Shown: positions 22,040-25,846 of the stretch, piece by piece | Numbering within the stretch: the stretch's first letter is position 1 | How the letters are laid out: each line of letters begins with the position of its first letter | Program-made: the position numbers and the translations under genes | NCBI RefSeq assembly: GCF_001194135.2 | Contig: NC_068988.1 | Location: 2,086,190 to 2,129,688 of the forward strand | DNA from: Octopus bimaculoides | Taxonomy: Eukaryota | DNA length: 43,499 bases | Direction: 5' to 3' | The notes under the pieces: generated by a model | What the model saw: the letters and a program-made list of their open reading frames with translations, nothing else | The model's database searches: none | What the model was told of the DNA's origin: nothing

Positions 22040-22158
22040 GTCGGGGCCATTTCACATTGAATGCAGAGATTCTTCTTAGATCACCAAAGTTAAGCAACAT
22101 TGAGCCTAATAAGTACTTAAATGGGTGACTGCTTGGGAAACCAAGGTGCTGTAGGCAT
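22040..22158 (+). pseudogene. 5S rRNA pseudogene, near full length
   Basis: GGCCAT..CACATTGAATGCA..GATCACCAAAGTTAAGCAACATTGAGCC..AGTACTT..ATGGGTGACTGCTTGGGAA..GGTGCTGTAGGCAT aligns to metazoan 5S, including box A and box C. Most changes are CpG to TpG/CpA. Confidence 0.9.
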
Positions 22159-22167
22159 CTTACCTTT

Positions 22168-22230
22168 TTCAAGGTGGTGCCCCAGCATGGTCTCAGTCTA
22201 ATGTCCGAAACGAGTAAAAAATAAAAGATA
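22168..22230 (+). mobile_element. SINE-A 3' module directly downstream of the 5S copy
   Basis: TTCAAGGTGGTGCCCCAGCATGG..CAGTCTAATG...GAAACGAGTAAAAAATAAAAGATA matches 6237-6298. Confidence 0.85.
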
Positions 22231-23700
22231 ATCAATGAAACAAGAACAGGTCACATGACCATTACGTATATCAGAAGTTTTTGAAGAATATTCAGTCTGG
22301 AAACAGAAATTTCTGTGACAAATTCCATGTTTTTTAAAACACTTTAAGTTTTGTTCACTGAAAATTTTACTTTTTTCTCTTTAATTTTCTTTCTGGTTCC
22401 ATGTATTGAACTGTGGTCATGTTGGAGCACCTTCATTTAGGACAGTACTATAGGTTTAAACAAGAAGCCATGGAATGGACTTCTTAAATACACTGCTATG
22501 TCTGCAGAGTTATATTTGCTATTTAAAATTTCATATTTTGAGTAAATCATGACCAAGCTGGCCAAAGACAATGATTCAAGATGCTTCTTTCTCTTTTTAA
22601 ATCCTTAACATTCTTGAGTGGTGGTGGTAGGGGTTAGATCATGTAATCTTTGATGGCCATCACTGATCAGTGTATTCAAGTGATGCAGTCTGCTAATCCT
22701 AAATTTAACAAATGTAGTTTCAAAACTGTTTGTAATGCATATTACAAATGATGTATTGTGCTGCTGCTGCTAGATTTTATCCATCATTTAGGGTTTTGAA
22801 ACTGGTTGTGATGCATTCTACAAATGACGTTTTCTGCTATTCCCAGATTTAGTCAATCTATAGTGTTTTTATAACTTGTTGGTTCTTTTATATGTATAGT
22901 AAGCAGTTGAAATGGCAATAATCTTTAGGTTAGTCTACTGTTATGGTTTTGGATAGTTCACATTTCCTTGCCTGAATATGAAAGCCAGTTTTTATTTTCT
23001 GTTGAAGTTCTCTGCAGATTTTAAAATATTTATGATAGTTACACCAAACTTATTTTACTCATTTTTAAACACTCAGGGTAGAGTGTGTTGGATTCTATAA
23101 CTAAACGCTCAATATTACACACCATAAACTTCCCATTCAATGATTGTTGTCAGCTGAAATGAATATCAAGTAATGAAACTGTGAAATTTTAAATCTTAAT
23201 ACATATAAATATTCCTAAATGGCTATTTAGAACTGTCACTTTATCTCTCTCATTTGATATTTCATAGAAATCTGTAATAATTGGTATCCCTGTCTCTAGA
23301 AATAACAGATACAAACAAGGTGTCACCAAGCAGTGGAAGGCTTCTCTTCACTTCACTCAAAAGGGAAGAGTTGTTCCCTAATGATTCAATTATCCGTAAC
23401 ACTATTTGCTGTTGCATTGTTTTGAACCCCACCTTGTAGACACACTTCAAGTGAAATACTGAACACCCTGTCTATTTAGTGCATTTGTTTCAGTGCATGT
23501 AACCAATCCATTGTAACCTTTTGATAATATATTGCAGGTTAGATGGGGTAGGCTTTTTTTAAATAAAATTTTAAGGTTTCTTCTGGTGCAGAAAAATATT
23601 CTTCTACATTGTTTCAATGAATGAATGAGCAACATGAGGAATTGCTTTTTGAAAAGTGTTAGAAGAACATACAGTTCTGACTGAATAGAAAAACAAAAAA

Positions 23701-23777
23701 CAACTGAGTCAGCTCTGATTGGATAGGAAAAGCAACTGAGTCAGCTCTGATTGGATAGAAAAAACAAGTGAGTCTGC
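23701..23777. repeat. 32-bp tandem repeat (2.4 copies) carrying TGAGTCA and CTGATTGG
   Basis: CAACTGAGTCAGCTCTGATTGGATAG twice exactly, plus a partial copy. Confidence 0.9.
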
Positions 23778-24139
23778 ACTAACATGTTGTATTGTTCTCA
23801 TGTAAAGAGTGAATAATGATTAGCAATTTTAAGTGGACAATCTATTTTCTGAAGAACACTGAAAAGATAAATTCTACTGACATAATCAAATAATTTTGAT
23901 GAGATTGATAATTGTAAATTGGAGATACTGTCACTGTCCACAAAACTTCTGTAGTGGGAGAAATAATGTCAATGGTAAATTCTTTCAGCCAGAGGTCACA
24001 CAGGGTCATTTTTGTAGTCTATTAAAGAAACTGAGTGAGATTTAGCTGCTATTTTATGTAGGTCAAGTAACCTTGTAGATGCTTCTTCCTTGGCTCAGAC
24101 TTCATAGATAATTCAGGTATACTCACCAGTTTTTTCATA

Positions 24140-24315
24140 TCTTCATTGGTTCAGGTACCCTTATTGTCTCTCTCCTACATTGGTTTGGTTACCTTTATTG
24201 GCTGGTATCTTCATTAGTTGGGAAACTCTTATTAGGGGTACTCATCCCTATTGGATTGAATCAAGCAATGTCAGTGCATTGAGGAGTGGATTAGGGTCCC
24301 TGATTGGCTCAGGTA
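24140..24315 (-). promoter_or_regulatory. Cluster of five co-oriented CCAAT boxes
   Basis: ATTGG at 24145, 24179, 24197, 24250 and 24303; the last reads GAGCCAATCAGG on the minus strand. Confidence 0.3.
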
Positions 24316-24461
24316 CTGATACCAAGTTCCCAGAATCCACTGTAGCAGTTGACTGTGATGGGAGAGCACATTATGGACTAAGGGATGACAAGTCAAAGGG
24401 AAATGGTTGTTTTCCAAAGAGAAGCCATCCTAACTGCCATGATTAAAAGACCTCGTTTTAC

Positions 24462-24505
24462 CTCTTTCTTATGTTTATTGGTGATGACTAATAAATGATC
24501 AAATG
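24462..24505 (-). CDS. Candidate 44-nt exon (xFDHLLVITNKHKKE), phase 1 to 0
   Basis: CTTTCTGTGATCACCTAACAG acceptor, GAG|GTAAAA donor, single open frame. Confidence 0.25.
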
Positions 24506-24950
24506 CTGTTAGGTGATCACAGAAAGTTATCTTCATCGGAAAGGAATGAGAAGCTCATGGTTTATTAACCAAGTGGGAAGATTTGGTGTTACTGTTTACT
24601 TTTTAAAGTGTATAGAGTTCAATGATAGTTTGAGCAGAAGAGCTTCAAGCATAACATCAGAGTTTGAATATATAAAACAATGTTAGATTTGTTGCTCTTA
24701 TGTTCCAGATTTCTCTTTGACCCTCCCAAGATATCCATTATGAGTTTTGTCATGGGCTGGTAGGACGTGTTCTCTCTCTCTCACACACACACACACTATC
24801 TCTTCTCACACATACACATACATTCAACATACACACACATATGCACACCTATGTAAAACTGAAAATATTAATACTATCAGATAACTGAAAATGCATTTTC
24901 TAGTGAGACTAATAAGTTATCATTATCTAATACTTGTGGTATTTTCTTGG

Positions 24951-25026
24951 TTATTATTCCAAGAATCTATTATTATTCCAAGAATCTATTATTATTCCAA
25001 GAATCTATTATTATTCCAAGAATCTA
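24951..25026. repeat. 19-bp minisatellite, 4 perfect copies (TTATTATTCCAAGAATCTA)
   Basis: Direct inspection. Confidence 0.95.
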
Positions 25027-25666
25027 TATGCCATTATGATTATATAATGAAACAAAACGCTCTAAATATTATGAATTCTAATTATTGAAGATAGCATTTA
25101 TATTTTTTCTTCTTTATTTCTTCAAACTAAATATGATCATATTTCTTGAAAGTTTCTCTGCAGAAGAAAAAGTAAGGCAAAAATATAGAATCTCTTTCAT
25201 CTGTAGTTTTGATGAAAAGAAATTAATAGGAAAAAAAAAAAATTATTTAAAATTATGTTTGAAATCATTTCCGTTTTGTTTGTACAAACATTTTCTTACA
25301 ATGTCATAACTATTACGAAGAAAATATTTCTCTTCTTCCTAATGTTTAGCAATATTTCTTTCAATTTTGTTTTTCTTGAAACTAAGATGAGTAAACTTCA
25401 GAAAAATATAAGATAGAAATAAATAAATATCTGCTACAAATCTCTGCATTTTGCCAGGAAGATGTCTGGAATTACCGAAATATTTTTTTGCCTGATTTAG
25501 TTTTATAATTATTAGAAATTGGTTTTGGTTCCATGGTGCAAATACTTAATGGAATAATTGTTAGAGATTTTGTCTCCCAGGAGAGTTGTTATTAGTTTAA
25601 TAAACACTAAGAATGGTAAGGGGTTTTCATGAATTTCTGTACTGAAATGTCCTCCCTGTTGAAGGG

Positions 25667-25771
25667 CTACTAGCTACGGCAGTGCATATTCTAAAATTAG
25701 AACAACAGAGAGGAAATTAGCATGGCCCCTGTGCAACAATGACATGAAAATTTATGAAGCATTCCATATTT
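25667..25771 (+). pseudogene. U6 snRNA pseudogene, full length
   Basis: CGGCAGTGCATATTCTAAAATTAGAAC..ACAGAGA..ATTAGCATGGCCCCTGTGCAA..ATGACA..AAATT..TGAAGCATTCCATATTT aligns to U6, with the ACAGAGA box (25705-25711) and AGC triad kept. Most CpGs are decayed and there is no TATA at -30. Confidence 0.92.
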
Positions 25772-25780
25772 ACTTTGCTC

Positions 25781-25846
25781 GCGGGGCTCCAGCATGGCCA
25801 CAGCCATTCGGCTGAATCATTTTAAAAAATAGAAGAATAAAAGAAT
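25781..25846 (+). mobile_element. SINE-A 3' module directly downstream of the U6 copy
   Basis: GCGGGGCTCCAGCATGGCCACAGCC..GGCTGAA...GAATAAAAGAAT matches 6240-6298. Confidence 0.85.

What the first reader, a model, noticed from the sequence alone, without database searches (positions are those of the whole stretch)
22040..25846. Two different Pol III RNAs (5S and U6) each joined to the same ~60-nt retroposon tail: candidate modular head-capture system
Seen: a 5S copy ending at 22158 and a U6 copy ending at 25771 are each followed, after 9-nt linkers, by the 3' terminal module of the family-A SINE (AAGGYGGTGCYCCAGCATGGCC..CAG..GAAAC..AAAAGATAAAAGA). Both fusions start at nearly the same point of that module, and no SINE body lies between. 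Established: U6/L1 chimeras form in mammals by template switching or RNA ligation, 5S-headed SINEs (SINE3) and U1/U2-headed SINEs are known, and LINE machinery recognises SINE 3' tails. Inference: two random insertions landing within 10 nt of the 3' ends of the only two Pol III-RNA copies in the window is unlikely. Possible explanations are new 5S- and U6-headed SINE families, recurrent chimera formation, or a tail that targets Pol III 3' ends/terminators and is then copied by read-through. I do not know of this being described in cephalopods.
Basis: partly seen in the sequence, partly recalled or inferred. Interest (0 to 1): 0.85.

Follow-up and report, generated by a model that had tools for sequence, protein, structure and literature searches.

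The report
5S and U6 copies fused to retroposon tail
In this octopus DNA, an old 5S rRNA copy and an old U6 snRNA copy are each joined to the short two-hairpin tail that the local SINEs use for copying, which fits known LINE-driven fusion of small RNAs and is probably not a new kind of system.

Summary
Rfam finds one full-length 5S copy (22040-22157) and one full-length U6 copy (25667-25773). They are the only small-RNA hits that pass threshold in the window. Each is followed, after 8-9 nt and on the same strand, by a ~60-70 nt module that also ends eight other retroposon copies here (10 motif copies against 0.13 expected). Adjacency by chance has a probability of about 1e-5.

The module is two adjacent hairpins plus an A-rich AAAAGAT-like end. 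That is the layout of a "stringent" LINE/SINE 3' recognition tail. Both heads join within about 10 nt of the base of hairpin 1.

Best reading: each head plus tail was copied from one composite RNA by the partner LINE's reverse transcriptase. This parallels mammalian U6/L1 and 5S/L1 chimeras and the way SINEs are born.

I could not tell one-off chimeras from amplified families (a SINE3-like 5S family, or a U6-headed family). No further octopus genome sequence could be reached with these tools. No partner LINE was found, and target-site duplications are absent or weak.

Published hints exist: about 24,000 5S-derived loci in giant squid, and a 5S-headed SINE in a scaphopod mollusc. This is a new member of a known kind, of moderate interest.

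The parts
22040..22157 (+). Full-length, decayed 5S rRNA copy (head). GTAGGC ends at 22156.
   Evidence: Rfam RF00001, 49.9 bits, model positions 1-120. 85/119 aligned bases match human 5S, with many CpG-type transitions.
22157..22164 (+). 8-nt linker ATCTTACC between 5S and the tail module. It may include the remnant of the 5S 3' U-run (TCTT).
   Evidence: Read directly. BLAST similarity to other tails starts at 22165.
22165..22231 (+). Tail module after 5S. T5 run at 22165-22169, hairpin 1 at 22172-22193, degenerate hairpin 2 at 22194-22207, A-rich end AAACGAGTAAAAAATAAAAGATAA.
   Evidence: BLAST 82-83% identity to the tails at 18949-19015 and 6233-6297. Covariance model 75.3 bits. Hairpin 1 is in the minimum-energy fold.
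25667..25773 (+). Full-length, decayed U6 snRNA copy (head). The conserved CCATATTT ends at 25771.
   Evidence: Rfam RF00026, 69.2 bits, model positions 1-105. 86/107 bases match human U6, 7 of 14 CpG positions are mutated, and non-CpG divergence is about 15%.
25772..25780 (+). 9-nt linker ACTTTGCTC. Its TTTGCTCG 8-mer also lies just upstream of the tail in the family-A copy at 27109-27116(-).
   Evidence: Read directly. 8-mer match (weak; about 0.04 by my estimate).
25781..25846 (+). Tail module after U6. Weakened hairpin 1 at 25781-25800, perfect hairpin 2 (CAGCC 25801-25805, loop ATTC, GGCTG 25810-25814), A-rich end AATCATTTTAAAAAATAGAAGAATAAAAGAAT.
   Evidence: Motif with 1 mismatch. Covariance model 67.4 bits for 25774-25846. 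Alignment.
25628..25638 (+). Candidate 5' target-site duplication CATGAATTTCT. Its partner CATGAATGTCT lies at 25848-25858, directly after the tail. If real, the insert starts 28 nt upstream of U6.
   Evidence: 10/11 match. About 0.05-0.15 expected by chance, so weak.
18938..19013 (-). Best-preserved reference tail, at the 3' end of a second SINE type (family B, with an internal ATC/GAT microsatellite).
   Evidence: Covariance model 79.2 bits. The two-hairpin fold has -22 kcal/mol and z = -4.25.
6234..6308 (+). Tail of a family-A SINE. The element has a tRNA-like head (GGCGTGGCTGTGTGGTAA), an internal TG/CA microsatellite and a body ending in ...AAAAATTCTTCAAGG.
   Evidence: Covariance model 77.8 bits. 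Sequence.
4590..4665 (-). Tail of a family-A SINE. Its head carries a B-box-like GGTTTCAGTCC.
   Evidence: Covariance model 65.5 bits. Sequence.
2807..2881 (+). Tail of a family-A SINE (decayed).
   Evidence: Covariance model 69.9 bits.
27034..27108 (-). Tail of a family-A SINE variant that lacks ATTCTTCAAG ahead of the module.
   Evidence: Covariance model 68.8 bits. Alignment.
32395..32473 (-). Tail (Y) with unrelated, non-repeated, non-coding upstream sequence. The module starts at the same point as in the 5S copy.
   Evidence: Covariance model 74.2 bits. Two-hairpin fold z = -2.24. No open reading frame upstream. No repeat match upstream.
22364..22440 (-). Tail (X) with unrelated upstream sequence. 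It lies tail-to-tail with the 5S element, about 130 nt away.
   Evidence: Covariance model 61.5 bits. Alignment.
31077..31094 (-). Family-A tail cut off within hairpin 1 and followed by unrelated sequence.
   Evidence: 15.3 bits, model positions 8-25.

Best explanation
Each locus is one ancient retrocopy of a composite RNA. The composite is a complete Pol III transcript (5S rRNA or U6 snRNA, from its first base to its 3' U-run) joined in sense orientation to the ~60-nt 3' recognition module of the octopus SINE/LINE system.

The module is two adjacent hairpins (GGYGGUGC-CCCA-GCAUGGYC and CAGYC-NNNN-GRCUG) followed by an A-rich AAAAGAT-type end.

Inferred mechanism: the partner LINE's reverse transcriptase starts target-primed reverse transcription on a tail-bearing RNA (a SINE or LINE 3' end) and copies the module. 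Just past the base of hairpin 1 it jumps to the 3' end of an abundant small RNA. Alternatively, the two RNAs were ligated before copying. Either way head and tail enter the genome in one event.

This is the process that makes U6/L1 and 5S/L1 chimeras in mammals and that is thought to create new SINEs. The U6 product cannot propagate itself, because animal U6 promoters lie upstream of the gene. The 5S product carries an internal promoter and could seed a SINE3-like family.

Shown: the anatomy, the non-random adjacency, the full-length heads and the shared structured tail. Inferred: insertion in a single event, template switching, and dependence on a LINE.
For: - Both heads are full length and on the same strand as the tail, 8-9 nt away, with no SINE body between.
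- The tail is a shared module: 10 copies against 0.13 expected, 9 at 61-79 bits with the covariance model, ending at least four different upstream contexts (families A and B, X, Y) besides 5S and U6.
- Chance adjacency is about 1e-5 (my arithmetic).
- Structure: 78% of cells pair against 50% or less in slid controls. In hairpin 2 one position is U-A in 4 copies and C-G in 3. The best-kept copies fold as two hairpins with z = -4.25 and -2.24.
- All four non-A/B contexts (5S, U6, X, Y) begin within about 10 nt of the base of hairpin 1.
- Head and tail look equally old. The U6 head shows about 15% non-CpG divergence, and tails are 77-83% identical to one another.
- In humans, U6 (70.9%) and 5S (10.5%) are the two commonest LINE-1 chimera partners. 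There U6 is full length, sense and 5' of the LINE 3' end, and the chimeras do not self-propagate (PMC11838501).
- The T5 run at 22165-22169 between the 5S head and the hairpins would stop Pol III before the tail in this copy. This argues against this copy being a transcribable master.
- The U6 linker 8-mer TTTGCTCG recurs just upstream of a family-A tail. This hints that the 3' partner was a family-A SINE RNA.
Against: - No convincing target-site duplication brackets head plus tail. There is none for 5S, and the 10/11 candidate for U6 is displaced 28 nt upstream.
- No autonomous LINE carrying this tail was found in the window.
- In L1 chimeras the junction position in the 3' partner varies widely, whereas here it is confined to about 10 nt.
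- Human 5S/L1 chimeras are mostly antisense and truncated, whereas this 5S is sense and full length.
- Two such elements 3.6 kb apart in a 43-kb window imply high genomic density if the window was not picked for them. That fits amplified families better than rare one-off chimeras.
- Giant squid has about 24,000 5S-derived loci described as 'likely SINEs'.
Confidence: 0.45

Rival explanations
1. Both are dead members of amplified 'simple SINE' families made of head plus tail only. One would be a 5S-headed, SINE3-type family transcribed from the internal 5S promoter. The other would be a U6-headed family fed by one or a few master loci, meaning real U6 genes whose terminator was interrupted by a tail so that Pol III reads through.
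For: - The two junctions lie within about 10 nt of each other, and the structure is a tidy head+linker+tail, as in simple SINEs.
- Two elements in 43 kb suggest high copy number.
- 5S has an internal promoter (established knowledge).
- About 24,000 5S-derived loci and about 1,300 U2 loci in giant squid are described as 'likely SINEs' (PMC6962438).
- 5S-headed SINEs are known in vertebrates and insects (HaSE3, with an RTE partner) and in a scaphopod mollusc.
- The U6 copy has no T4 run between U6 and the tail (ATATTTACTTTGCT), so read-through is possible.
- SINEU families show that snRNA heads without internal promoters can still amplify (Kojima 2015, as cited).
Against: - No second copy of either junction could be retrieved. 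The protein-level searches found many antisense-5S reading frames but none with the tail. This is weak evidence, because octopus DNA is almost absent from those collections.
- The T5 run sits between the 5S head and the tail hairpins in this copy.
- Animal U6 lacks an internal promoter (established knowledge).
- The two linkers are unrelated in sequence.
Confidence: 0.35
2. Two-step origin. Severely 5'-truncated tail-only copies inserted, by target-site preference, into the T-rich terminator just downstream of pre-existing 5S and U6 genes or pseudogenes. Read-through copying may or may not have followed.
For: - Tails with unrelated, non-repeated upstream sequence (X at 22364-22440 and Y at 32395-32473) show that near-minimal tail units exist on their own.
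- Both junctions lie in or next to T-runs: TCTT..TTTTT after 5S and TTTACTTT after U6.
- Target-specific LINEs that sit in snRNA genes are known (Tx1/SINEU, cited).
Against: - This needs two independent truncations at nearly the same position, both in the same orientation as the small RNA and both within 9 nt of its end.
- No duplication of 9/10 or better brackets the tail alone.
- Both heads are dispersed, decayed copies. There is no recognisable TATA or other upstream promoter element ahead of the U6 copy (read).
Confidence: 0.12
3. Coincidence. These are ordinary SINE or LINE fragments that happen to lie next to unrelated 5S and U6 pseudogenes.
For: Tails are dense here, about one per 4.4 kb.
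Against: The joint probability of two same-strand tails starting within 30 nt of the two small-RNA 3' ends is about 1e-5 (my arithmetic).
Confidence: 0.02

Closest known systems
U6/LINE-1 and 5S/LINE-1 chimeric retropseudogenes of mammals (Buzdin 2002-2003; Doucet 2015, PMC4476161; Moldovan 2019, PMC6789731; PMC11838501)
   Same: A full-length U6 in sense orientation sits directly 5' of the 3' end of a retroposon. The same two small RNAs (U6 and 5S) are the main partners in humans. The composites form by reverse-transcriptase template switching or by RtcB RNA ligation, and they do not self-propagate.
   Different: The 3' partner here is not L1 with a poly(A) tail. It is a ~60-nt two-hairpin, microsatellite-ended tail of the 'stringent' type, shared with octopus SINEs. 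The junction is confined to the base of hairpin 1 instead of varying. The 5S is sense and full length, whereas human 5S chimeras are mostly antisense and truncated. Target-site duplications are not demonstrable here.
SINE3 (5S rRNA-headed SINEs: zebrafish SINE3, fruit-bat and insect families such as HaSE3, scaphopod Ante)
   Same: A 5S-derived 5' head is joined to a LINE-type 3' tail. 5S carries an internal Pol III promoter, so amplification is possible.
   Different: Family status is unproven, because only one copy has been seen. There is no body between head and tail. A T5 run precedes the tail in this copy. No such family is described for octopus in the papers I could search.
SINEU and Tx1 LINEs with U1/U2 heads (Kojima 2015)
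   Same: An snRNA-derived head without an internal promoter is attached to a LINE-mobilised 3' part (cited).
   Different: The head here is U6, a Pol III transcript, not U1 or U2. No Tx1-type, target-specific LINE is in evidence.
Stringent LINE/SINE tail recognition (eel UnaL2/UnaSINE1; Kajikawa and Okada 2002)
   Same: A conserved 3' stem-loop plus short 3' repeats is shared among different elements. In that system the shared tail is sufficient for mobilisation in trans. Here the tail is two hairpins with a compensatory change plus an AAAAGAT-like end.
   Different: The partner LINE has not been identified here, and there is no functional test. Two hairpins are present instead of one.

Membership tests
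SINE3 (5S-headed SINE) | 5' head derived from 5S rRNA | tested here: met
   RF00001, 49.9 bits, full model, at 22040-22157.
SINE3 (5S-headed SINE) | Intact internal type 1 promoter (box A, intermediate element, box C), with transcription able to reach the tail | tested here: inconclusive
   The box regions are recognisable but decayed: AAGTTAAGCAAC and TTAAATGGGTGACTG. A T5 run at 22165-22169 lies between head and tail. It could be a later C-to-T change from the TTCTT seen in other copies.
SINE3 (5S-headed SINE) | Multi-copy family with a uniform head-tail junction | not testable with these tools
   No octopus genome could be reached. Protein-based and DNA pattern searches found no second copy.
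SINE3 (5S-headed SINE) | 3' tail shared with an autonomous partner LINE | tested here: inconclusive
   The tail is shared with at least two SINE types and two other contexts. The LINE fragments in the window (11518-11889, 19928-20116) do not end in it, and no reading frame lies upstream of tails X or Y.
U6/LINE chimeric retropseudogene | Full-length U6, in sense orientation, directly 5' of the 3' end of a retroposon | tested here: met
   RF00026, model positions 1-105, at 25667-25773. The tail starts at 25781 on the same strand.
U6/LINE chimeric retropseudogene | A single insertion event bracketed by target-site duplications | tested here: inconclusive
   The only candidate is a 10/11 match, 25628-25638 with 25848-25858. 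Its 5' copy lies 28 nt upstream of U6, and it is near chance level.
U6/LINE chimeric retropseudogene | The 3' partner is L1 (or an L1-mobilised polyadenylated RNA) | tested here: not met
   The 3' part is a two-hairpin tail with an AAAAGAT-type end, not L1 with poly(A). This element works like the mammalian class but is not a member of it.
SINEU (snRNA-headed SINE) | Head derived from U1 or U2 snRNA | tested here: not met
   The head is U6. No U1 or U2 hit appears even at E<=5.
Stringent-type LINE/SINE 3' tail | Conserved 3' stem-loop supported by covariation | tested here: met
   78% of cells pair against 50% or less in slid controls. Position 35/42 is U-A in 4 copies and C-G in 3. Folds give z = -4.25 and -2.24. 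With only 9 sequences, the support is modest.
Stringent-type LINE/SINE 3' tail | Short tandem repeats at the extreme 3' end | tested here: met
   AAAAGATAAAAGATA and its variants end the tails. An O. vulgaris transcript carries the same end.
Stringent-type LINE/SINE 3' tail | Retrotransposition depends on the tail and on the partner LINE's reverse transcriptase | not testable with these tools
   This needs a retrotransposition assay.

The most novel reading that the evidence does not exclude
In octopus, where the active LINEs demand a specific two-hairpin tail, abundant Pol III RNAs can enter the genome only as head-tail composites. The reverse transcriptase would have a preferred jump site at the base of hairpin 1. 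Every dispersed 5S or U6 (and perhaps U1, U2 or 7SL) pseudogene would then carry the tail at a near-fixed junction. This would be a built-in 'head capture' step that keeps producing candidate SINEs, including a previously undescribed U6-headed class.
Probability: 0.15. Interest if true: 0.7.

Novelty: new member of a known kind. Interest (0 to 1): 0.4.

Why it matters
If a genome-wide survey confirms it, this would extend LINE-mediated small-RNA chimeras, so far documented mainly for mammalian L1, to a mollusc whose LINEs recognise a structured tail. It would also catch SINE birth (head joined to a minimal tail) in the act. Finally, it could explain the very large counts of 5S-like loci reported in cephalopod genomes. 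SINEs are the most abundant repeat class in octopus genomes, so knowing how new heads are recruited bears on how these genomes expanded. As it stands, the evidence is two decayed copies, and the mechanism is inferred by analogy.

Tried and rejected
1. Finding more copies through proteins. The whole 5S+tail lies in one 67-aa antisense reading frame (22032-22235). The word-indexed search found nothing. An exhaustive phmmer search of 1.84 billion representatives gave 103 hits. In the 44 I read, the match is an antisense translation of 5S from other eukaryotes, and none carries the tail peptide. A 'restored' tail+5S query again gave 5S-only hits. Loci fetched from those hits were rDNA units.

2. 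Harvesting octopus DNA through the LINE fragment at 11518-11889. Hits include O. bimaculoides UniRef proteins at 71-95% identity. The one I looked up (P0004) is not in the contig index. The ENA and Logan loci L001, L002, L004 and L005 contain no tail. L001 and L002, the only ones scanned with Rfam, also have no 5S or U6.

3. Exact tail-pattern scans. The prokaryote genome collection gave one chance hit in a GC-rich bacterial contig. The metagenome and viral collections gave none.

4. A self-cleaving ribozyme that would define the tail's 5' end (to fit an RNA-ligation model). No ribozyme family appears even at E<=5, so I dropped the idea.

5. Target-site duplications. There is none for 5S and one weak, displaced candidate for U6.

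6. Partner LINE. There is no coding signal upstream of the orphan tails, and Pfam gives only weak PHD-finger hits for the LINE fragment.

7. Literature. No paper in the searchable library describes 5S- or U6-headed SINEs in octopus, and the tail sequence is not quoted in any paper. An O. vulgaris transcript in the supplement of PMC9115989 carries the same tail, but no 5S or U6 words occur in those files.

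
Full report
**Source.** A LINE fragment in the window (11518-11889) matches Octopus bimaculoides UniRef proteins at 71-95% identity. 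The window is therefore octopus DNA, most likely O. bimaculoides.

**The observation.** An Rfam scan at curated thresholds returns exactly two hits in 43.5 kb. One is a 5S rRNA copy at 22040-22157(+), 49.9 bits, covering the full model. The other is a U6 snRNA copy at 25667-25773(+), 69.2 bits, also covering the full model. A permissive scan (E<=5) adds only microsatellite-driven microRNA noise, and ARAGORN finds no tRNA.

Both copies are old. U6 matches human U6 at 86/107 positions, half of its CpG positions are mutated, and non-CpG divergence is about 15%. 5S shows the same transition-rich decay.

**The tail.** The 17-mer GGTGCYCCAGCATGGYC occurs 10 times with up to 3 mismatches, against 0.13 expected. 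One copy starts 19 nt after the 5S end (22176) and one 10 nt after the U6 end (25783), both on the same strand as the small RNA.
- A covariance model built from nine tails recovers those nine at 61-79 bits and the truncated tenth. It finds nothing else above noise.
- BLAST aligns 22165-22231 to other tails at 82-83% identity.
- The U6 tail is more diverged, but it shares an exact 17-mer and the 3' arm of hairpin 2 with the copy at 6243.
- The linkers are ATCTTACC (22157-22164) and ACTTTGCTC (25772-25780). No SINE body intervenes.
- With the eight other tails as background, both adjacencies arising by chance has a probability of about 1e-5.

The junctions differ by about 10 nt in module coordinates. 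And 'only two Pol III RNAs' applies only to copies that Rfam can detect.

**What the tail is.** It ends several different elements.
- Family A has a tRNA-like head with GGCGTGGCTGTGTGGTAA and GGTTTCAGTCC boxes, an internal microsatellite, and a body ending in ...AAAAATTCTTCAAGG. Copies lie at 2816, 4637, 6243, 27083 and 31076.
- A second SINE type has an ATC microsatellite (18988).
- Two copies, X (22415-) and Y (32448-), have upstream sequence that is unique in the window and non-coding.

The best-preserved copies fold into two adjacent hairpins, GGYSGUGC-CCCA-GCAUGGYY and CAGYC-NNNN-GRCUG, with z = -4.25 and -2.24. Across nine copies, 78% of cells pair against 50% or less when partners are slid. 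One position of hairpin 2 is U-A in four copies and C-G in three.

After the hairpins comes GAAAC and then an A-rich AAAAGAT-type repeat. An O. vulgaris transcript in a published supplement carries the same tail.

This is the layout of a 'stringent' LINE/SINE 3' recognition tail, as established for eel UnaL2/UnaSINE1 by Kajikawa and Okada 2002 (cited). The 5S, U6, X and Y contexts all begin within about 10 nt of the base of hairpin 1. That point is the 5' edge of the structured unit, which gives the 'same junction' a simple structural meaning.

**How it most likely arose.** Four features point to an RNA-level origin in which head and tail were copied together.
- Both heads run from the first base of the RNA to its 3' U-run.
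- Both heads are in sense orientation.
- Both lie directly 5' of a retroposon 3' end.
- Head and tail look equally aged.

The closest documented process is LINE-1 chimera formation. Among 253 human chimeras, 70.9% involve U6 and 10.5% involve 5S. The U6 there is full length, sense and 5' of the LINE 3' end, and the products do not self-propagate. The proposed routes are template switching during target-primed reverse transcription or prior RNA ligation by RtcB (PMC11838501; PMC6789731). Template switching from a LINE or SINE 3' end onto a small RNA is also the standard model for SINE birth.

I therefore favour composite retrocopies made by the partner LINE (confidence 0.45). The jump or join would lie at the edge of the structured tail.

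Several points in this window lean toward independent chimeras over transcribable masters.
- A T5 run sits between the 5S head and the hairpins.
- The two linkers are unrelated.
- The U6 linker 8-mer TTTGCTCG recurs just upstream of a family-A tail (weak).
- Animal U6 genes use upstream promoters (established knowledge).

**The main rival.** The two elements may instead be members of amplified simple-SINE families (0.35). In favour:
- the tight junction;
- the density (two in 43 kb);
- the internal promoter of 5S;
- the T4-free junction after U6, which permits read-through;
- about 24,000 5S-derived and about 1,300 U2 loci in giant squid, 'likely SINEs' (PMC6962438);
- known 5S-headed SINEs in vertebrates, insects and a scaphopod;
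- SINEU, a precedent for promoter-less snRNA heads.

The two readings are not exclusive, because a family starts as a chimera. A two-step origin by terminator-targeted insertion of tail-only copies (0.12) needs two matched truncations and finds no duplication around the tail alone. Chance is excluded.

**What I could not do.** No further octopus genome sequence was reachable.
- Three protein searches and one exhaustive profile search found many antisense-5S reading frames from other eukaryotes, but none with the tail.
- Loci fetched through LINE or 5S hits were from other organisms or were rDNA units.
- Exact-pattern scans of the prokaryote, metagenome and viral collections gave only one chance hit.

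These negatives say little about copy number in octopus.

Target-site duplications are missing for 5S. For U6 there is a single 10/11 candidate that would place 28 extra bases ahead of U6. No LINE in the window ends in this tail. No ribozyme that could define a 5' end was detected.

**Comparison and novelty.** The elements work like mammalian U6/L1 and 5S/L1 chimeras. They are not members of that class, because the 3' partner is a structured non-L1 tail. The 5S element has the architecture of SINE3, but family status is untested. SINEU membership fails, because the head is U6. No paper in the searchable library describes 5S- or U6-headed elements in octopus.

I rate this a new member of a known kind, with interest 0.4. 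The most novel reading still open is that, in a genome of stringent LINEs, all small-RNA retrocopies are made as head-tail composites at a preferred jump site. That process would continuously spawn SINE candidates, including a U6-headed class (probability about 0.15).

Noticed in passing
window 11518-11889 (+), running into the N gap at 11889: 5'-truncated LINE fragment encoding a PHD-like CxxC motif and the C-terminal part of a reverse transcriptase (FRYLG..., LSLRVKGRLYDACVRTTMLHGS). It is 71-95% identical to O. bimaculoides UniRef proteins, which identifies the source organism. Its 3' end is lost in an assembly gap, so whether it carries the tail is unknown.
   Followed up: partly
window 19928-20116 (+), running into an N gap: Open reading frame fragment ...KILWDFMIQCDHEIENRKSDIVLIEKESKQCWIIDIACPADNKV. 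From memory it resembles the C-terminal nuclease-like region of some invertebrate retroelement proteins. Pfam gave no significant hit.
   Followed up: partly
window 10986-11055: Near-perfect 26-bp inverted repeat (CTGTAGACAAATAGGTGTAAACACAC ... GTGTGTTTACACCTATTCGTCTACAG) with an 18-nt spacer. Its only Rfam hit is far below threshold (MIR8742, 33.9 bits against 130). It could be a foldback, a MITE end or a hairpin-RNA locus.
   Followed up: no
window 22165-22440: The 5S tail (+) and the orphan tail X (-) lie tail-to-tail, with their A-rich ends about 130 nt apart. This may be two insertions into the same A/T-rich spot or a twin-priming-like event.
   Followed up: no
window 31077-31094 (-) and the sequence 3' of it in element orientation: The family-A copy at 31076 loses the tail inside hairpin 1 and continues into unrelated sequence (ATGCCAAGTTGACATACCTGGTGTCC...). 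This may be a later insertion or deletion, or a different 3' partner.
   Followed up: no
window 23672-23774 and 24951-25027: Two short tandem arrays lie between the 5S and U6 elements. One is a 32-nt unit repeated 2.5 times that contains CTGATTGG (an inverted CCAAT-like motif). The other is a perfect 19-nt unit, TTATTATTCCAAGAATCTA, repeated 4.1 times.
   Followed up: partly
window-wide, e.g. 2600-2690, 4790-4860, 6040-6100, 27200-27640, 31230-31420: Family-A SINE copies carry expanded internal TG/CA or ACAT/TATA microsatellites. Many assembly gaps (N runs) sit right at these arrays, so SINE-internal microsatellites seem to be a main cause of gaps in this assembly.
   Followed up: no
window 27109-27116 (-) compared with 25774-25781 (+): The 8-mer TTTGCTCG in the U6 linker is also found about 10 nt upstream of the tail in the family-A variant at 27083 (GATTTGCTCGACTAAAAGTGGTGC). 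If this is not chance (about 0.04 by my estimate), the 3' partner of U6 was a family-A SINE RNA with an internal deletion.
   Followed up: partly
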